Source: Octopus bimaculoides
Taxonomy: Eukaryota
Assembly: GCF_001194135.2 (NCBI RefSeq)
Contig: NC_068981.1
Span: 133,246,102 to 133,295,595 of the forward strand
Length of the DNA stretch: 49,494 bases
Direction of reading: 5' to 3'
A model generated the notes under the pieces. It saw only the letters and a list, made by a program, of their open reading frames with translations, did not search any database and had not been told where the DNA came from. Within the stretch, counting starts at the first letter, position 1, and each line of letters opens with the position of its first letter. The position numbers were made by a program, and so were the translations under genes. This document shows positions 12,946 to 36,198 of the stretch, one piece after another.

Positions 12946-13252
12946 TACATGCATACACACACACACANNNNNNNNNNNNNNNNNNNNNNNNNNNNNNNNN
13001 NNNNNNNNNNNNNNNNNNNNNNNNNNNNNNNNNNNNNNNNNNNNNNNNNNNNNNNNNNNNNNNNNNNNNNNNNNNNNNNNNNNNNNNNNNNNNNNNNNNN
13101 NNNNNNNNNNNNNNNNNNNNNNNNNNNNNNNNNNNNNNNNNNNNNNNNNNNNNNNNGCTATCGTAGAACACACTTGCCCAAGGTGCTGCGCTATGGGACA
13201 GAACCTGAAACCACATGGTTGCAAAGCGAGCCTCTTAGCCATACAACCATCC
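12643..13252 (-). mobile_element. SINE family A, diverged, with a gap in the internal microsatellite
   Basis: Tail and body at 12643-12850; head CACTTGCCCAAGGTGC..GAACCTGAAACCACATGGTTGC at 13170-13252. Confidence 0.7.
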
Positions 13253-14419
13253 TTGCACTTCTATATAGAGGTTAAAGAAAAAAGTAACAAAAACAAGAAC
13301 AACGTTTATACCACAGCACATGTCACAATAACAACATGTAACACTATATCCACACAGCTACAGCAAATAAACAAACGCTAAAATCAAGAGTTTTTCGAAA
13401 TCAGCCACCAAAATCTACACCGAATACATATCGTAAAATGCATATCTTCCCGTAGAGTATGATTTCGAACCCTTCTTTCGATTAGGTAGAAAAATACAAT
13501 ACGGACATCTAAAAATTCAAAAGTTATAAGAGCAGGTAAATATCACAAACTTACACCCCAGAACTGGCTCTCACAATGTTTAAAATAGCACCCACGAAAT
13601 TCCCAGTCGCCTTTCTTGCCAGTAACATAAGAGGACGTGAAATACGACCAACTTTCACACTCCAAAACATAAACATACCACACACACGCACGCACACACG
13701 CATACACATACACAAAGATGTACAAACAAAAGGTAAAACTTCTAGTAATTACAATTCCTCTGTAACATGACCACATAGATAGATGCAGTAATGAAAACAA
13801 AACGACGCACAAACATAATTAAAGCAATCGCAGCTATAACTACAACAATGTTATATATACAACACATGAGTTCCATCATGGATCATGCTAGCGCTACTTA
13901 GGCTCCAATCCTCCCACAATAAAACGACAAAGCACAGAAAATTGAGCACTTCTCATTATGGCAAACTGCACAGTGATTACACAGAAAACAGGATAAACAA
14001 TGCTAGAAATTAAAGAGCATCCGGATATACACATGGGGTCATTTTGATACTGAGGGAAGCTTCAGACCTTAAAGTTCCTGTTAGGACAGGTCATGAAAAT
14101 CACTTCCAAATACACAGAGCACTACAAATTATTAAAACATTCTAAAAACAATAGCTCTTCCGGACAAACATGAGGAACACATGCGCACATAAATAACCGT
14201 AACATTAATAACTTCAGTGGTTCTATACACTTTAGTGGGATGCACACCATTGACAATATGCTCAAAGAGCAGCAACAGTCCCACTCTTAACTCGTCTAAC
14301 TTGACTACCTCTGCTGTGGTCACCACAAGAATCTTACGTGCGGACAGGGTAGAGAGGGCAACGTATGCAGACCCTCGTGCTGCACCCATACTATGCATCA
14401 GTGCATGTTGCAGTGTGTA

Positions 14420-18419: not shown

Positions 18420-18490
18420 GCTAGTGGACAATGGTGCCGCATTGTGGGACTGAACCTGATGCCACATAGTTGCGAAGCGAGGCTCTTTTT
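18420..18490 (-). mobile_element. SINE family A head fragment
   Basis: GGTGCCGCATTGTGGGACTGAACC..CCACATAGTTGCGAAGC matches the family A head. Confidence 0.55.
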
Positions 18491-19029
18491 CACACAACAA
18501 TGTCAGCCCCTAATTTTGGGATTGAAAGCTATACCACTACCAAACTGTATGCCACTGCATAATGCCAAAGGCCCCCACCTTCTCCGTCTAACGTAAGGAC
18601 CTAATAATACAATAGCATAGAATCCAATGGCTCGCAGTTTTTCACTACTTTGAGGTCTGCAAGGCGTAAATAATTTTTTTCCTGCGATACCCAGTGACTC
18701 CACGTCACAAAAAAATTGCTACTAAAGGTGGAGTTGTCCAAACACTCTCATTCACCAAAGCCAAAAACGGAGAGAGCGACCTTCAAATACAATGAAATAC
18801 ACTATCACCAATTGTGACACTGCATCATAACGTCAGCCACTGGCTGAAAAAAGCAAAACTGGTGTTTACTGGACCTTTAAGTCTCGCCTGATGAATTTTT
18901 CAGCCATTCTTGCTTAAAGTCAGACAGTTGTATGAAACTTTAAGTACCAGAATTTGACTCTACTCTCCGTACTGAGTTGTCCAATAAATAAACTTTCTGC
19001 TGTTGTTCTCAAACCTTTTTAAAAAAGTA

Positions 19030-20079: not shown

Positions 20080-20374
20080 TTATGCATGTACGTATGTATG
20101 TACAGATGTATATATTTCCGTAATTTTAATCTCTAAGTTCAAACCATGTCATTGGGAAAAAAAAGCTTCTTATCAGACAGCCATATATAAATTGATATAT
20201 AAATATATAACAATTTATATATCAGACGCCTATATAAATTGTTATTTAGAGTCATATCTTTAAGTATTTCATCTTTCTGTTAATTCAGAATCAACGATGG
20301 TCTTTTGGTAGATTTGAATGATTAAGAATTAACAAGGTCCGTTTGACTCTATGGATATATTATTACTTTTAATG

Positions 20375-20915
20375 TTATCATCAGTCCGAATACTCTGGAT
20401 GCACGTTCGAACTGGGGAACAAGCTACTGTACGACGACTGGCAGCGTCATTCGGCGACTCACCGTAAGTAATTTTACGGAGGGGTCGAACGTGCATCAAG
20501 CATATTTGGACTCATAATAACATCGCGAATTTACTTATCACTTAGTGCTCCCCGTCCGTAATTTATTTACGGTGAACCGCCGCATAGCGCTGCCAGTCAT
20601 CATAGGGTGACTGGAAAAGCATAAGAGAGGATAATCTGTTAATTCAGCTCATAGTGTCGTCTGCTTAGTGTCTGTGTCCGATGAGGAGGTAACTACTCCG
20701 AAATGCTAGCATCTCACAGTCTAGGTAGATGGCGCTGCGAGCTGATCCAGATGTATACACACTATTTGTCGACAAGCAAAATATATTCTCCGTGACAAAA
20801 TGCAGTGAGTAGCTTGTTCCCTAGTTCGAGCGTGCATCAAGCATATTCGAACTGATAATAAAATTGCAAATTTATTTATCACTGCTTAGCGCTTCCCCTC
20901 CGTAATTATTATTAC
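20375..20915 (+). mobile_element. Retrozyme-like element: ~341-bp monomer with ~90-bp terminal redundancy, preceded by an inverted, internally deleted copy
   Basis: Direct repeat 20485-20570 versus 20826-20915; inverted repeats 20375-20428 versus 20808-20861 and 20436-20484 versus 20550-20598; type I hammerhead at 20672-20719. Confidence 0.7.
20672..20719 (+). ncRNA. Type I hammerhead ribozyme, slightly mutated
   Basis: CTGTGT-CCGATGA-GGAG-GTAACTA-CTCC-GAAA-TGC-TA-GC-ATC-TCACAG. Stem I is CTGTG/CACAG, stem II is GGAG/CTCC, and stem III is the palindrome ATGCTAGCAT, with an AUC site after 20713. Deviations are U4C and a U.U mismatch at 1.1/2.1. Confidence 0.65.
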
Positions 20916-20923
20916 TGTCTATT

Positions 20924-21283
20924 GACAGGCATGGCTGTGTGGTAAAGAAGCTCGCGAAGCAAGTACATTATTTTGAATTCTGTCCCACTGCGCGGCACCT
21001 TGAGCAATTACGTTCTGTTGTAACCCTGAGTTGATCAACAATACTTTTGAGTGAATCTGGTGGACGAAAATTGTGTAGAAACCCATTGTGTGTGTCTTCG
21101 TGTTTGTTTATCCCCCAACACGACTTCACAGCCGGTGCTGGTTTGTTTACGTCCCCGTAACTTACCCGTTCGGCAAAAAAGACCAGATTTAAAAAGTAGC
21201 TCTTGAGGTCGATTTCTTCGACTAAACGCTTCAAGACAGTCCCCTAGTATGAGTGCAGTGGAATGACTGATAAAAGATAAAAG
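20924..21283 (+). mobile_element. SINE family A, diverged full-length copy
   Basis: ATGGCTGTGTGGTAAAGAAG head, GCGCGGCACCTTGAGCAA CORE-like segment, GTTTACGTCCCCGTAACTTA body and GAATGACTGATAAAAG tail. Confidence 0.75.
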
Positions 21284-21707
21284 GAAACACATAGCCTCTA
21301 ATTTTAGCATTAATTTCGGGGTCGTATATGTGGTAGAAAGACTTCTGACTAGTGTCTATTTTTGGGGGATGACCGTATCTATGCTGTGTGATAGACTTGA
21401 TTCCTTCCCTTTACGTTAGCCGCTCTAGCATTTTGAATGGAAACCTTATTATTTTACGAAACCATTTCTCCTCGATATGACTAACTGTCCTTTTCTCTCA
21501 TGACTTCTCTTATAATCTCTTCTCTGATGTTTTATCATTCTCGCTGTGCTACATGATTCAATTTTCCCTTTGATTTGTTGAAAAATTCGATTTCTTTTTA
21601 CGGCGTATTTTTTTCTTCTCTTCATATTTTAATTCTAAATTGTTTTACCTTTTATTCTTTTCACGGTCGATTCTCTACAATTATTGCTTTATTATTACTT
21701 TAATTAT

Positions 21708-21917
21708 CAAGGCGGTAAACTGGCACAATCGATAACACACCGCACAAAAAAAAAAAAAGATGCATCGCAGCATTTTCTGTCTTTACGATCCGGGTTCAAA
21801 TTCATCGTTTCAGGGCGAACGTATTAATTACCAGTTAAGTTCTGCCATCGATGCAGTCGACTAGCTTATTCTTCTCTAAAATTTCAAGCCTGATTCCTAA
21901 AGCAGAAAGGATTATTT
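21708..21917 (+). mobile_element. SINE family B, diverged
   Basis: AAGGCGGTAAACTGGCACAATCG head, GGGTTCAAATT B box and ATTTCAAGCC..GAAAGGATTATT tail. Confidence 0.6.
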
Positions 21918-22102: not shown

Positions 22103-22430
22103 TCTTTTTCTTTTCCTTATTTCTGCCATTAGACTGCGGCCATGCTGTGACACCTCTTTGAAGAATTTTAGACGAACAAATCGACTCCAAGGCTTACTTT
22201 TTTTTGTAAGCCTGTTACTTATTCTATCGGTCTCTTGCTGAGCAGCTAAGTTACGGGGGACGTAAGGACAGCGACACCGGGGTCAAATACAGACACATAA
22301 ACAAATACACATACACACATATAAGACGGGCTTTTTCGAGTTTTCGTCTACAAAACCCACTCACAAGACTTTGGTCGGCCCGAGGATACAGTAGAATACC
22401 CCCACCCAAGTGCCACACAATGGAACCTTA
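22103..22430 (-). mobile_element. SINE family A, head truncated
   Basis: GACTGCGGCCATGCTG tail; CTAAGTTACGGGGGACGTAA; GACGGGCTT..CACTCACAAGACTTTGGTCGGCCCGAGG. Confidence 0.8.
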
Positions 22431-22538
22431 GTAATAATATGTATACATACGTGATATATACATGTACACACACACACATATATATATATATGCATACATA
22501 TATACATGTATAATATACATACATACATGCATACATAC

Positions 22539-27515: not shown

Positions 27516-29240
27516 ATCTCGCCACATAAACATGAAACAGGACGGAAGCCACCTGCCAAAAGGAAAGGACTACGTACCACCTGCCCCAAAAGGGAGGTAC
27601 GTAGATGTAGTGCGTGGTACAAACCAGACCTATCAATATGTTGTTGAAAGGGCAGCTGCTGAACAATAGTCTTTTTTGTGCATGGCACAAAAGATTTAAC
27701 AGCAACTGACCTGGCAACAATCTCACAGATGGGATTATCCCCAATACACAAGACCACCACAGCAAATAGACCAAAGGTGGGCACCACTGGCCACAACACC
27801 CACATCACATCGGTGCTCTTACTGAACATCAGAGGACTGTTAACACTTAGTAACAGGACAAAAATCCCTTTCTTGAGAGACCTTGTTGCTTGCAATCAAG
27901 CCTTATGTATAGCACTTACGGAAACACACCTGAAACCAGATACAGCAAATGCCGAAATACACATACCACAGTATGTTGTATTACAAACCGACAGGAAAGA
28001 AAGGTGTCCTGGTGGAGTCGCTATGTACATCCGCGAAGACCTCACACCCCAGGTCCTTTTGTCACACTCAAATTCAGTATATGACACTAATTGTACATAT
28101 AAGACAACTCGGTGTAGTTATATGTGCTACATATCACCCTCCAGATGCCCCAAATCATGTAGACAAGTTTGAAGACTGCCTTACAAAAATAGAATTTCTA
28201 GTCACATTAGAAAAACACATAAATGTACTTCTTATGGGAGACTTCAATCTTCCCAATGTCAGATGGCCCGAGTTATGCAGTTGATACAAAAGTCTCACGG
28301 GTAATTCAGAATCCTGAAGACACTATGTACCTGCAATGTGAGCTGGATGAAATGTACAAGTGGGCTGAAAAAAATAGCATGCAGTTTAATGCTGAAAAGT
28401 TTCACATGCAAGACTAATCGGAATACCCATTAAATACACTGGACTTGGAGGGATTGCAATCCCAGAGGCACAGACCTGGGCATTTACATGAATAATGATG
28501 CATCCTTTCATGTGCATGTTGCTAAATTGGCAATGAAATGCAGGCGGCTGATCGGATGGATTCTTAGAACTTTTAGAACAAGAGATCAGGAAACCATGAT
28601 GGTCCTCTGGAAGACACTTGCCCTTAGTCACTTTGACTATTGCTCTCAGCTATGGTTACCAACCAGTGTCAAATTAATCTCAGAACTTGAGGCAATCCAA
28701 CGAAGCTACACGAAGAAGATATCCTCTATGCAGATTATAAGCTATTGGGAAAGATTCAAGAGATTAAGACTCTATTCCTTAGGGCGTAGGCGAGAAAGAT
28801 ATGCCATAATATACATCTGGAAGTTGCTGGAAGGACTTGTCCCAAACTATGGCATCGAGAGTTACACAAATACTAGAACTGGGCGCCACTGCATAGTGCC
28901 AAGGACTCCAAATTTGCTATCAAGATGTAGGACAAGATACTGCAATAGCCTGGGCTTCAGAGGTCTACAACTCTTCAATATCCTCCCGAAAGACCTGAGA
29001 GACCTGCATGGGGTGGATGTAGGTGTCTTCAAAATTAAGCTGGACCTCTTCCTGTCAAGTGTCCCAGATGAACCATCTTCGAGGCCGGAGGTGCAGATGA
29101 GGGCAGCTGCATCAAACTCTCTCATGCACCAAATGTCAATTCCTGAAAAGCATTCGTGAAGTAAAATTATGTAGCAACACCAAAAGGCTGTGCCCCAGCA
29201 TGGCCACAGCTCATGAGCTGGAACTAGATAAAATAAAATA
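27515..29240 (+). mobile_element. CR1-group LINE with a large internal deletion (APE N-terminus fused to RT C-terminus), pseudogenised
   Basis: APE motifs LLLNIRGL, IALTETHL, DR..GGVAMYI, ATYHPP and MGDFNLP. These are followed directly (junction ~28270) by SYAVDTK (degenerate YADDTK), LDEMYKWAEKNSMQFNAEK, FDYCSQLW, LEAIQRSYTKKI and YWER..LYSLGRRRER. Stop at 29159, then the stem-loop tail. Confidence 0.9.
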
Positions 29241-31365: not shown

Positions 31366-31556
31366 CTTTTACTCTCTTTACTGGAGCATCGCCTTTAGTC
31401 GAGCAAATCGACCCCAGGACTCATTCTTTGTAAGCCTAGTACTTATTTTATCGGTCTATTATGCCGAACCGCTAAGTTATGGGGACCTAAACACACCAGC
31501 ATCGGTTGTCAAGCGATGTTGGGTGGGTAAACATAGAGACACAAGCACAAACCTGT

Positions 31557-31590
<34 letters not shown>

Positions 31591-31750
31591 ACGACGGGCT
31601 TCTTTCAGTTTCCGTCTACCAAATCCACTCATAAGGCTTTAGTCGGCCCGAGGCTATAATAGAAGACACCTGCCCAAGGTGCCACGCAGTGGGACTGAAC
31701 CCGGAACCATCTGGTTGGTAAACATGCTACTTACCACACAATCACTCCTG
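31366..31750 (-). mobile_element. SINE family A, best-preserved near-full-length copy
   Basis: Minus: TGTGTGGTAAGTAGC (A-box region), GGGTTCAGTCCC (B box), GCGTGGCACCTTGGGCAGGTG (similar to the CORE motif GTGACCTTGGGCAAGT), an internal TA tract and body. Probably one of the octopus OR1/OR2 CORE-SINEs (recalled, not verified). Confidence 0.9.
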
Positions 31751-32254
31751 TGATAATTCACAGCATTGACAACCAATGAATTCAATGGGAGTTTATGTAA
31801 CACACTCACACACTTCTGTATGTCCAAGGAAAGAGGGAAAACTCCCGTTATCTGCATAGTTTCATTTGGAAACTTCAGTTAGAGAACTCCTTTACCAGTA
31901 TAACATGAAATATTCTCGACAAGGTTCTTCCTTATTCGTTCGGAACGTAAAGCCATCATCTTCGTCTCTGCGAGAGACAGCACAAATTACAACACCCGAC
32001 ATTCATCTCTAAACAAATATCTATACTGTCATTATGCCACCACAAATGACATTTTGCACGGAACAGTTTTAAACCATTAGCTGTTAATATTATTCTGTAA
32101 GTTTCACTCCAGAGAAAACAATAACCCATTGTCTCCCTTTATATGAGACCTAGGTGGCCAAAGTATTACAATATATATAACTATGCAGCAATTATATTTA
32201 CGAAAACTTTTCACTAGTCACCATTACTTAACTTATGTAGAATACGCATATATA

Positions 32255-33282: not shown

Positions 33283-33596
33283 CGAATGCTTTAATTTACA
33301 AATCATTTATTTTCCACTCTCCACCGTATGGAGATTTCATGGAGGATTTTCTTCGCGTTGCTTTTCTTCCTTCTGTTCCGATATTCTTATATTCACCAAA
33401 TACTTCTACCTTTTCCAAACCCTCTCTTATACTCGACATTTGGTGCATGAGAGATTTTGATGCAGCTGCCCTCATCTGCACCTCCTGCCGCGAAGATGGT
33501 TCATCTGGGACACTTGACAGGAAGAGGTCCAGCTTTATTTTGAAGACACCTACATCCACCCCATGCAGGTTTCTCAGGCCCTTCGGGAGGATATTG
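33283..33596 (-). mobile_element. CR1-group LINE 3' fragment, close relative of the 27515-29240 element
   Basis: NILPKGLRNLHGVDVGVFKIKLDLFLSSVPDEPSSRQEVQMRAAASKSLMHQMS is nearly identical to the C-terminus at 28977-29137. Confidence 0.9.
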
Positions 33597-34716
33597 TTGT
33601 GTCTGCAGGAGCTGGTCTGTATATTCATATTTTCTCTCACTCTCTCTATGCCTTCTACCTCCTTTCTCTGCCTCTCCCTCCCTCTCTCTCTCTCTTTCCC
33701 GCTCTCTTTCTCCCTCTTTCACTCACCCACATACGTATGTGTGTGTGCGCATGTGCATATGCGTATAAGTTATGCCCCTCTTCCGGTAAAAATTTAATAA
33801 GCATGTTCTCTACTAAAAAGCATCGAGTAATTCTTTAGTTTAAGGTAAGACTAACACCTCAGACGTAGGAAAATACTCCTAAATTGAAGATGCTCTCACT
33901 CAGCAGGAATAAAAGCCAGGCAAGCCAAATATGGCGTACAGTAAGAACAATGTTAGTTCTATCAAAAAACAAAATATTCACATTTCCTCATTATCTATTC
34001 ATGACCTAATTATAAATTCAAAATGACCGACAAGGCAAACATACTTTTAATTTAGATCAGTTTTTCCACCAAACTATCAAAGGTAATATGGTCTAACTTG
34101 GAATGGTAACAGATTGGTGTACAGACTAGAAGCTGAATAAAAGACATTGATGAAGTTGGCCTAGATTTCATTGTGGGGTCGCTCATAACCATATGCAGCA
34201 GTTCAAGCGTTTTTGACCCTGTGTAGTAGCGTTCAAGTGTCTCTAGAAGATGAACAAATAAAGTGCATCTAATCACACTAAAACAGCAGTTAGCCAAGTA
34301 TCAAAGTAATAGACATGCAAAATGTCAGCCTGTATATATATATATATATATATATGTGTATGAAGATGAAAACTATTTTCGCAATTATTTATAGACAGCG
34401 TTTCGGCAACGGATCGGAGACGGTCGTAAAAATTGTTACGTTACCTATTTGTTATGACATGCTTTGTATTAAAAAATAAGCTATAAACGTGGTCCAATGG
34501 ATGTGTTTATTAATTTGAGGCTTTCTCCATTTTCTGATTATTTGTATACGTAAGTATGCTTTTGTATCCATATATATCTGCGTAAGTTTTTATAACTAGT
34601 TTTATGGTTTTATATACTTTTTGTAGGCTTCTTTATGTGCCTTATATTTTTATATCTTTATTTTTTATTTTTTTATTTTTACTTTATTCTGATTTTATAT
34701 TTGTATTGAATTTTGT

Positions 34717-34852: not shown

Positions 34853-35460
34853 GTCCCTTCTCCAGTTGCTAAATGTCCTTTAAATTTGAAATCTTAATTG
34901 TTATTATGACATGGTATGTCATAAGTGTCTGTATATTGTGTTTTTTGTCAATTTAGTTATAAAATAAACAGATTAATAAAGGGAATACAGTGTCTGCAAG
35001 TCGATGGGTACCGCATATTCTCCTCCATTTTCTCGTTGCTATATACATTTAGGGTAAAATAACCCCCTTTTACCCGCACCCACTTATTGCACTTGGTATA
35101 ACACTAGTGTAACAATAATTGGGTACCCTCCCAGCAGTATATTGGATAGATACTATCCCTTAGTGGGTTGGATACTCAACACTAACTCTCTTGGATTATA
35201 TANNNNNNNNNNNNNNNNNNNNNNNNNNNNNNNNNNNNNNNNNNNNNNNNNNNNNNNNNNNNNNNNNNNNNNNNNNNNNNNNNNNNNNNNNNNNNNNNNN
35301 ATATATATATATATATATAAGAGGAATAACTACCAAGGTGGATTCCTAATATGATAGAAGAAGACGCTAAATCATTTAACCACGAAGAATGTGTTCTCAA
35401 AAACTTTCAGCAAACGCCGGAATGTAAAGCAAGCAAGACAAATGAAAAGATACAAAATTA

Positions 35461-35526
35461 ACTACATACCATTGTTTCGCTCTTACCATTTACAAAACGT
35501 AAATGTCTGAAGCTCTTCAGTGCAGC
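35461..35526 (-). ncRNA. Type I hammerhead ribozyme, intact core
   Basis: Minus: GCTGCA-CTGAAGA-GC-TTCAGA-CATTTAC-GTTTT-GTAAATG-GTAAGA-GC-GAAA-C-AATG-GTA-TGTAGT. Stem I is 6 bp (GCTGCA/TGTAGT), all core nucleotides match consensus, and the site is GUA. Confidence 0.8.
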
Positions 35527-35631
35527 CGTCATATAGAAAACATAATTCACAGAACTAGACATGAGATGTCCTCTCAAAAGAGAACATGTATAAAGTACCA
35601 TCAATTATATTTGAGAGTATATTTCAAATGT

Positions 35632-35690
35632 CTGAAGAGCAGCGGACATTTACGCTTTGTAAATGGTAACAGCGAAACCATGGTATGTAA
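35632..35690 (+). ncRNA. Type I hammerhead, inverted partner copy; 5' strand of stem I missing
   Basis: CTGAAGA-GC..CATTTAC-GCTTT-GTAAATG..GC-GAAA-CCATGGTA; stem III is the perfect palindrome ACCATGGT. Confidence 0.6.
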
Positions 35691-36198
35691 CTTATCACCA
35701 AATTTTGTATCTTTTCATTTGTCTTGCTCGCTTTATATTCTGGCGTTTGCTGAAATTTCTTGAGAACACATTCTTCGTTGTTAGACGATTTAGCGTCTTC
35801 TAGTATATTATGAATCCACCTTGGTGGTTATTCCTCCTATATATGATGTAATATAATTTATGTATGCTAGGTCACTGGTTTAAATTGATTTAAATTAATA
35901 TTAATTTCTACCCTCATTATTTAACTTTATATATATATATATATGAAAAATAATAAGAGTTGGAAATGCGTTAATTTTAATGTATATATATAAATTATTC
36001 TGTTTCCAGTAAAATAAGTTTTGTTTTTGAACAAATTTACATATTTTCCCCATTTATTTATATTTATGAAAGTAAAAGTGCAAAATATGCGTTCGCATGA
36101 AAAATGTTTTCCTATCATAGTTTTACTGACAATATATTCCTGTATGTTTTCACAAGGTGAATTTTACACTCACAACACATAAAAAAAGAGAAAGAGAT

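What the first reader, a model, noticed from the sequence alone, without database searches (positions are those of the whole stretch)
20375..20915. Retrozyme-like ~341-bp tandem unit with a type I hammerhead and an inverted, ribozyme-deleted leader
With segments a-e the layout is [rc(a) rc(b) rc(e) rc(d)] a c d e - HHR - b a c d. The forward part is a 1.25-mer of a ~341-bp monomer (20485 to 20826), as expected from reverse transcription of a circular or multimeric RNA. The HHR has a fully palindromic stem III (ATGCTAGCAT) suited to dimeric cleavage. The 5' inverted copy joins e directly to b, omitting the ~210-bp HHR-containing part; inverted ends are typical of PLE-type integration. No coding capacity is seen. 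The unit size fits described metazoan retrozymes.
Basis: partly seen in the sequence, partly recalled or inferred. Interest (0 to 1): 0.85.

Follow-up and report, generated by a model that had tools for sequence, protein, structure and literature searches.

The report
Decayed hammerhead retrozyme-type insertion
This is an old, inactive 539-bp insertion of a small non-coding mobile element that carries a self-cleaving hammerhead RNA motif and was pasted in the way Penelope-like retrotransposons paste; the kind is known in animals, though I found no report of it in cephalopods.

Summary
Window 20368-20906 is one 539-bp insertion flanked by a 10-bp target-site duplication, TATTATTACT. It contains an inverted, 5'-truncated copy (20368-20484) followed by 1.24 forward copies of a 341-bp non-coding unit. 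The forward copy runs 42 nt further at its 3' end than the inverted copy, which matches the 'tail' of Penelope-like element (PLE) insertions.

The forward unit carries a type I hammerhead motif with 6-position helix I, 4-bp helix II and a perfectly palindromic 10-nt helix III (20703-20712). All core bases are present except U4, which is C. The 1.1-2.1 pair is U-U. A motif like this is expected about 0.013 times per window by chance. Helix I continues into a long rod, and the circular monomer folds at z = -4.1. The inverted copy lacks the ~200 bp that hold the ribozyme.

The best reading is a decayed copy of an animal non-LTR retrozyme, meaning a PLE-mobilised non-coding hammerhead unit. With one mutated ribozyme, the locus cannot release an RNA circle.

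Three things could not be tested because no cephalopod DNA was reachable: copy number, a consensus ribozyme and circular RNA. No Rfam hammerhead model matches. A second hammerhead-bearing inverted pair (35313-35844) and a PLE endonuclease fragment lie in the same window.

The parts
20358..20367 (.). Left target-site duplication, TATTATTACT
   Evidence: An exact 10-mer is shared with 20907-20916. Among random position pairs of the same geometry in this window, a shared word of >=10 nt occurs in 0.6%.
20368..20484 (-). Inverted, 5'-truncated copy of the unit, lacking the ribozyme segment. Read on the minus strand it is end of c, d, e, b, a, and its 3' end is at the left edge.
   Evidence: Inverted repeats I1, I2 and I3. 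It is 79% identical to forward segments 20530-20604 plus 20808-20870. nhmmer gives E = 2e-6.
20485..20825 (+).
   Evidence: Direct-repeat spacing is 341-344. GC is 44.3%, and the circular fold gives -103.4 kcal/mol, z = -4.06, with 67% of bases paired.
20605..20807 (+). Segment present only in the forward copy (about 198-203 bp). It contains the ribozyme and its long helix I rod.
   Evidence: In the inverted copy e (ending at 20430) abuts b (20428). No duplication or clear microhomology was seen at the junctions on direct reading.
20637..20745 (+). Rod-like hairpin domain formed by helix I and its extension, enclosing the hammerhead
   Evidence: In the minimum-free-energy folds, 20656-20668 pairs with 20721-20733 and 20672-20676 pairs with 20715-20719. 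The 81-nt segment has z = -3.2.
20672..20719 (+). Type I hammerhead motif. The core is C3 C4(!) G A U G A ... G A A, helix II is 4 bp with loop GUAACUA, helix III is the palindrome 20703-20712, and the predicted cleavage is after C20713.
   Evidence: Direct reading, the descriptor search and random-sequence controls, and a dimer cofold of -55.4 against 2 x -22.4 kcal/mol with a 10-bp intermolecular helix III. No Rfam match.
20826..20864 (+). Second copy of segment a. It ends at the position that corresponds to the 3' end of the inverted copy.
   Evidence: Repeats D2 and I1 and the alignments.
20865..20906 (+). 42-nt 3' extension ('tail'). It repeats segments c and d and is present at the right end only.
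   Evidence: Repeats D2 and D5. PLE insertions carry an optional 30-40 bp tail at one end (PMC8557442, PMC11167929).
20907..20916 (.). Right target-site duplication, TATTATTACT

Best explanation
Window 20368-20906 is one old retrotransposition event of a short (~341-nt) non-coding unit that carries a dimer-type type I hammerhead ribozyme. This is an animal 'non-LTR retrozyme', a non-autonomous element that uses the reverse transcriptase and GIY-YIG endonuclease of Penelope-like elements (PLEs).

Inferred life cycle of the family, drawn from the literature:
- Tandem or more-than-unit transcripts are cut by paired hammerheads, whose palindromic helix III forms between two copies.
- The monomers are circularised by a host RNA ligase.
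- The RNA is then copied by a PLE enzyme that nicks and primes on both DNA strands and starts reverse transcription at either of two internal sites.

That mechanism accounts for every structure seen at this locus:
- a 10-bp target-site duplication;
- an inverted 5'-truncated copy next to a forward, more-than-unit copy;
- a 42-nt tail at one end only.

The ~200-nt ribozyme rod is missing from the inverted copy. The most likely cause is that the polymerase jumped across this stable hairpin, or that it was deleted later.

This copy itself is dead. It has one ribozyme rather than two. Its core has U4 changed to C, and 1.1-2.1 is U-U. Segments that were presumably identical at insertion now differ by 14-20%.

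Shown here: the anatomy, the motif, the duplication and the folds. Inferred: PLE mobilisation, RNA circles, and the activity of an ancestral ribozyme.
For: - Repeat architecture: confirmed.
- Target-site duplication: the 10-bp duplication has p of about 0.006 against this window's own background. This means a single insertion event rather than stepwise rearrangement.
- Tail: the 3' end of the inverted copy corresponds to about 20864-20868 in the forward copy, which runs 42 nt further. PLE insertions typically show partial tandems, an adjacent inverted 5'-truncated copy and a 30-40 bp tail at one end (PMC8557442). A purified PLE protein cleaves and extends both strands and has two reverse-transcription start sites that explain the tail (PMC11167929).
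- Hammerhead: all core positions except U4 are present. G10.1-C11.1 is present, helix I has 6 positions, helix II is 4 bp and helix III is palindromic. This is the architecture PMC4209133 gives for canonical metazoan type I hammerheads.
- Chance: the expectation is 0.013 per window, and 0 of 300 random sequences had a palindromic helix III.
- Folding: helix I extends into a rod (z = -3.2). The circular monomer has z = -4.06, 67% of bases paired and GC of 44%. The dimer fold gains about 10.6 kcal/mol through a 10-bp helix III and leaves the core open.
- Strand: the motif is on the sense strand defined independently by the 3' tail.
- Published retrozyme traits: the unit size lies within the 170-400 nt range, with low GC and self-paired RNA (PMC7229834). 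Retrozymes are related to PLE pLTRs (bioRxiv 10.64898/2026.07.22.740005).
- Same-window context: a second inverted pair with strict-core hammerheads sits in a (TA)n tract at 35313-35844. A PLE GIY-YIG fragment lies at 235-830(-).
- PLEs are abundant in octopus genomes (PMC13282606, PMC8967140).
Against: - No Rfam hammerhead model scores at E<=10, even on an 81-nt stretch. Rfam also misses the strict-core motif at 35632-35685, so this negative result carries limited weight.
- The core deviates at U4 and the 1.1-2.1 pair is broken.
- Only one hammerhead is present, and there are only 1.24 units.
- No second copy of the ribozyme-bearing segment exists in the window, and none could be retrieved from elsewhere. 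Family status, a consensus ribozyme and covariation are therefore untested.
- The 42-nt tail is slightly longer than the published 30-40 bp.
- There is no significant similarity to the 3' UTR of the PLE fragment in the window.
- The ~200-bp ribozyme segment could be an addition to the forward copy rather than a loss from the inverted one.
Confidence: 0.7

Rival explanations
1. It is a remnant of an autonomous Penelope-like element, not a separate non-coding family. On this reading two pLTR pieces with the PLE's own hammerhead are left after 5' truncation or internal loss of the RT-EN reading frame.
For: Hammerheads sit in PLE pLTRs, and most genomic motifs are solitary leftovers of truncated PLEs, sometimes as pairs on opposite strands 100-700 bp apart (PMC4209133). 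The insertion hallmarks are the same for autonomous PLEs. A PLE fragment lies in the window.
Against: Segments a-c-d recur after only 341 bp with nothing coding between them. The template therefore already had a short period. The motif has the canonical 6/4 helix sizes, not the min-HHR form typical of metazoan PLEs (longer helix II and an extra base after A9; PMC4209133). There is no significant similarity to the 3' UTR of the PLE fragment in the window.
Confidence: 0.15
2. The hammerhead resemblance is accidental. On this reading the locus is an unrelated repeat, for example a foldback or MITE-type DNA transposon with 58-nt terminal inverted repeats, or a local duplication-inversion.
For: The inverted repeat 20371-20428 / 20808-20865 could be read as terminal inverted repeats. 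Rfam finds no hammerhead. The core has a mismatch. A genome of gigabase size would hold hundreds of chance descriptor matches at the rate found.
Against: The 10-bp duplication lies 4 bp outside the left arm but 41 bp outside the right arm, which does not fit a TIR element. The a-c-d direct repeat is not explained. The motif is improbable at window scale, has a long matching helix I rod, and lies on the strand predicted by the tail. A Helitron or Helentron would leave no 10-bp duplication.
Confidence: 0.1

Closest known systems
Metazoan non-LTR retrozymes (Cervera and de la Pena 2020, PMC7229834; Li et al. 2026 preprint, 10.64898/2026.07.22.740005)
   Same: It is a non-coding unit of 341 nt, within the 170-400 nt range. 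It has low GC (44%) and a strongly self-paired RNA. It carries a type I hammerhead with 6-position helix I, 4-bp helix II and a palindromic helix III suited to dimeric cleavage. The duplication is longer than 4 bp. It has a head-to-tail arrangement and a link to PLE machinery.
   Different: It has only 1.24 units and one ribozyme, whereas described loci range from dimers to large multimers. The core has C at position 4. Family copy number and circular RNA are unknown. An adjacent inverted truncated copy is not part of the published retrozyme description. I found no cephalopod retrozyme in the searchable literature.
Penelope-like element insertions and their pLTR hammerheads (PMC4209133, PMC8557442, PMC11167929)
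   Same: It shows a partial tandem, an adjacent inverted 5'-truncated copy, a one-sided 3' tail, and a hammerhead on the sense strand a short distance upstream of the 3' end.
   Different: There is no RT-EN reading frame and the period is 341 bp. The ribozyme is of the canonical type rather than the min-HHR form. The tail is 42 nt against the published 30-40 bp.
Tandem-repeat type I hammerheads of newt satellite 2 and Schistosoma (cited in PMC4209133 and PMC7229834)
   Same: They are short non-coding repeats with type I hammerheads whose weak, palindromic helix III requires two copies for cleavage.
   Different: Those are long arrays with intact cores and demonstrated cleavage. This is an isolated, mutated copy.

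Membership tests
Hammerhead ribozyme, type I | Conserved core C3 U4 G5 A6 N7 G8 A9 ... G12 A13 A14, A15.1-U16.1, H17 | tested here: inconclusive
   All positions are present except U4, which is C at 20679. One core change is compatible with a decayed copy but not with a fully active ribozyme.
Hammerhead ribozyme, type I | Three helices around the core, helix I open-ended, G10.1-C11.1 | tested here: met
   Helix I has 5 bp plus a U-U at 1.1-2.1 and then a 13-bp extension. Helix II is GGAG/CUCC. Helix III is a 10-nt palindrome that pairs between two copies.
Hammerhead ribozyme, type I | Match to a curated covariance model | tested here: not met
   No Rfam hammerhead family matches at E<=10. The strict-core motif at 35632-35685 is also missed, so the models appear insensitive to this architecture.
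Hammerhead ribozyme, type I | Self-cleavage | not testable with these tools
   This needs in vitro transcription of dimeric constructs.
Metazoan non-LTR retrozyme | Short (about 150-450 bp) non-coding unit in head-to-tail repeats, each with a type I hammerhead | tested here: inconclusive
   The period is 341 bp but there are only 1.24 units and one hammerhead. There is no coding capacity.
Metazoan non-LTR retrozyme | Low GC and a highly self-paired monomer RNA | tested here: met
   GC is 44.3%, 67% of bases are paired, and z = -4.06 against 200 dinucleotide shuffles.
Metazoan non-LTR retrozyme | Multicopy family in the genome | not testable with these tools
   There is no further copy in the window. 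No cephalopod DNA is in the reachable collections.
Metazoan non-LTR retrozyme | Expression as linear and circular RNA | not testable with these tools
   This needs RNA-seq back-junction reads or a northern blot.
Penelope-like element type insertion | Partial tandem with an adjacent inverted 5'-truncated copy | tested here: met
   The feature is described in PMC8557442.
Penelope-like element type insertion | Optional 30-40 bp tail at one end | tested here: met
   A 42-nt extension is present at the right end only. It is slightly longer than the published range.
Penelope-like element type insertion | RT plus GIY-YIG reading frame (autonomous element) | tested here: not met
   The longest ORF is 56 aa and has no homologues. 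If the insertion is PLE-related, it is non-autonomous.
TIR DNA transposon / MITE | Terminal inverted repeats directly flanked by the target-site duplication | tested here: not met
   The duplication is 4 bp from the left arm and 41 bp from the right arm.
Helitron / Helentron | No target-site duplication | tested here: not met
   A 10-bp duplication is present. The other terminal signatures of these elements were not examined.

The most novel reading that the evidence does not exclude
Octopus-type genomes may hold a so far undescribed family of ~340-nt hammerhead retrozymes. These would be mobilised in trans by resident Penelope-like elements and would still give rise to small circular RNAs. 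On this reading, the locus directly records PLE-style both-strand priming and tail formation on a non-coding ribozyme unit.
Probability: 0.25. Interest if true: 0.55.

Novelty: new member of a known kind. Interest (0 to 1): 0.4.

Why it matters
The locus links two literatures in one insertion. It has the anatomy of a non-coding hammerhead unit (a retrozyme) and the full set of Penelope-like integration scars: a target-site duplication, an inverted truncated partner and a one-sided tail. That is sequence-level support for the recent proposal that animal retrozymes are non-autonomous riders of PLEs. If the family proves to be multicopy, it would extend such elements to cephalopods. As a single mutated copy it has no likely function at this site.

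Tried and rejected
- Rfam at gathering threshold on the whole window, and at E<=10 on 701-nt and 81-nt stretches, gave no hammerhead match. It also gave none for the strict-core motif at 35632-35685.
- BLASTN (word size 7) and nhmmer of the unit against the window found only the local copies.
- Exact look-up of the element's ORFs in the protein collection found nothing. A concatenated six-frame query against 5.8 billion proteins gave no hit at E<=10.
- I tried to reach host PLE loci through the GIY-YIG fragment of the window. Only 1 word-sharing candidate turned up, and there were no hits.
- I tried to harvest host DNA through the LINE reading frame. The best hits were 64% identical on metagenome contigs of about 1 kb, so the host genome is not in the collection.
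- Exact-pattern scans of metagenome and viral contigs with the ribozyme and with segment a gave 0 hits.
- Local alignment of the unit against the PLE 3' UTR and against the second element was not significant.
- The TIR-transposon and Helitron readings were rejected because of where the duplication lies and because it exists at all.
- A nested-insertion origin for the 200-bp ribozyme segment was considered. No duplication flanks the segment, but the idea cannot be excluded.

Full report
**Setting.** The window is a draft eukaryotic assembly with many N gaps, dense microsatellites and interspersed SINE-like repeats. The finding lies between two SINE copies. One begins near 20927, about 10 nt after the element.

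**Observation: the repeats.** The layout is real.
- Segments a-c-d (20485-20573) recur at 20826-20906/20918 with a spacing of 341-344 bp and 81-87% identity.
- The left part (20372-20484) is the reverse complement of segments a, b, e and d, at 79-86%.
- In the inverted copy, e and b are adjacent. The forward copy has about 198-203 bp between them (20605-20807).
- There is no coding capacity. The longest ORF is 56 aa, and a six-frame query found nothing among 5.8 billion proteins.

**Observation: the hammerhead.** Reading against the standard numbering gives the following.
- Helix I 5' strand is CUGUGU, 20672-77.
- C3 is 20678, C4 is 20679 (U expected), and G5-A9 are 20680-84.
- Helix II is GGAG/CUCC with loop GUAACUA.
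- G12-A14 are 20700-02.
- A15.1 to U16.1 form the perfect palindrome AUGCUAGCAU, 20703-12.
- C17 is 20713.
- Helix I 3' strand is UCACAG, 20714-19, with a U-U at 1.1-2.1.
- A 6-position helix I, a 4-bp helix II and a palindromic helix III are what PMC4209133 describes for canonical metazoan type I hammerheads.

**Is the motif more than chance?**
- My descriptor, relaxed at position 4, finds this site. It is expected 0.013 times per window in first-order Markov sequences with the window's dinucleotide frequencies. With a palindromic helix III it occurred in 0 of 300.
- Helix I continues, after a small internal loop, into a further 13 bp and beyond. The 81-nt segment folds at z = -3.2.
- Two copies cofold into the double hammerhead with a 10-bp intermolecular helix III and an open core. 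The energy is -55.4 kcal/mol against -44.8 for two monomers.
- Against this, no Rfam hammerhead model reports the site, even at E<=10 on 81 nt. The same search misses a strict-core motif elsewhere in the window, so I treat that negative as weak.

**New anatomy.**
- An exact 10-mer, TATTATTACT, lies at 20358-20367 and 20907-20916, just outside the limits of homology. A shared word that long occurs in 0.6% of random position pairs of the same geometry in this microsatellite-rich window.
- The whole complex, 20368-20906 (539 bp), is therefore one insertion.
- The 3' end of the inverted copy (left edge) corresponds to about 20864-20868 of the forward copy, which continues 42 nt further.
- The ribozyme lies on the sense strand defined by that 3' end.

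**Mechanism.**
- PLE insertions are typically partial tandems. They often have an inverted 5'-truncated copy next to them and a 30-40 bp tail at one end (PMC8557442).
- A purified PLE protein nicks and extends both DNA strands, and it starts reverse transcription at two nearby internal sites. This explains the tail (PMC11167929).
- Animal type I hammerheads in short tandem repeats define the non-LTR retrozymes: 170-400 nt, low GC, self-paired, and expressed as circles (PMC7229834). A 2026 preprint relates them to PLE pLTRs (10.64898/2026.07.22.740005).
- The unit here is 341 nt with 44.3% GC. As a circle it folds at z = -4.06 with 67% of bases paired.
- I therefore read the locus as a PLE-type insertion of a retrozyme-kind unit.
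- The missing ~200 bp in the inverted copy coincide with the stable ribozyme rod. A template jump or a later deletion is the likely cause, but an addition to the forward copy is not excluded.

**State of this copy.**
- With one ribozyme, a changed U4 and a broken 1.1-2.1 pair, the locus cannot release a monomer.
- Copies that were presumably identical at insertion now differ by 14-20%.
- By the calibration in PMC13282606 (JC distance 0.09 at about 25 million years), that suggests an age of tens of millions of years. This is a rough inference.

**Context in the same window.**
- At 35313-35844, within a (TA)n tract, there is an inverted pair of ~210-nt arms that are about 90% identical. Each arm begins with CUGAAGA ... 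GAAA and has the palindrome ACCAUGGU (ACAAUGGU in the left arm).
- In that element the predicted cut site is about 153 nt from the outer 3' end. This is close to the 151-155 nt found in the element under study.
- At 235-830 on the minus strand there is the C-terminal GIY-YIG part of a PLE reading frame. The Pfam GIY-YIG match is weak (E = 0.037) and the frame is shifted. Its 3' UTR ends in (TA)n.
- That UTR holds a possible min-HHR with the U3-A8 core variant described in PMC4209133. I did not verify it.
- PLEs are abundant in octopus genomes (PMC13282606, PMC8967140).

**Limits.**
- No other copy of the unit could be obtained from the window, the protein collections or the DNA scans.
- Copy number, a consensus ribozyme, covariation and RNA circles therefore remain untested.
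- I found no report of cephalopod retrozymes in the searchable literature.

**Verdict.** It is a new member of a known kind and of moderate interest.

Noticed in passing
window 35313-35844: A second hammerhead-bearing element sits inside a (TA)n tract. It is an inverted pair of ~210-nt arms that are about 90% identical, separated by 111 nt. Each arm starts exactly at a strict hammerhead core, CUGAAGA ... GAAA, with the palindromic helix III ACCAUGGU (ACAAUGGU in the left arm). The predicted cut sites are A35685 (+) and A35467 (-). Only the minus-sense copy has a helix I (7 bp, 3 of them G-U). Rfam does not detect it.
   Followed up: partly
window 235-830 (-), 3' UTR 30-234 (-): A 5'-truncated, frame-shifted Penelope-like element fragment. 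It has a GIY-YIG endonuclease C-terminus (..CGTSFIGSTARKLHVRIKEH..; Pfam GIY-YIG E = 0.037) and ends in (TA)n. Its 3' UTR holds a possible min-HHR with a U3-A8 core (UUGAAAA U GGG..CCC C GAAA UAUUGAAUA C) at about 117-150 (-).
   Followed up: partly
window 27678-29159 (+) and 33296-33640 (-): LINE remnants. The 223-aa reading frame at 28488-29156 has hundreds of relatives (best 64% identity), some of them carrying Pfam RVT_1 (PF00078). A second copy of its 3' end lies at 33296-33640 (-).
   Followed up: partly
window 20927-21290 (+); also 31440-31772 (-), 22106-22443 (-), 13165-13255 (-), 18433-18502 (-), 48689-48767 (-): Several copies of one SINE-like repeat with a tRNA-like head (GGCATGGCTGTGTGG...). 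One starts about 10 nt after the right duplication of the element.
   Followed up: partly
window 46356-46852 and 21707-21900: A 229-bp unit is repeated 2.2 times in tandem (77% matches). It has a tRNA-like head (GTGAGCTGGCAGAATCGTTAGCACGC...). A similar-looking sequence lies at 21707-21900, possibly a second SINE family.
   Followed up: no
window 8949-9147: A 22-bp minisatellite (CTATCCTGGGATGAATTGTCAC) with 9 copies at 94% matches.
   Followed up: no
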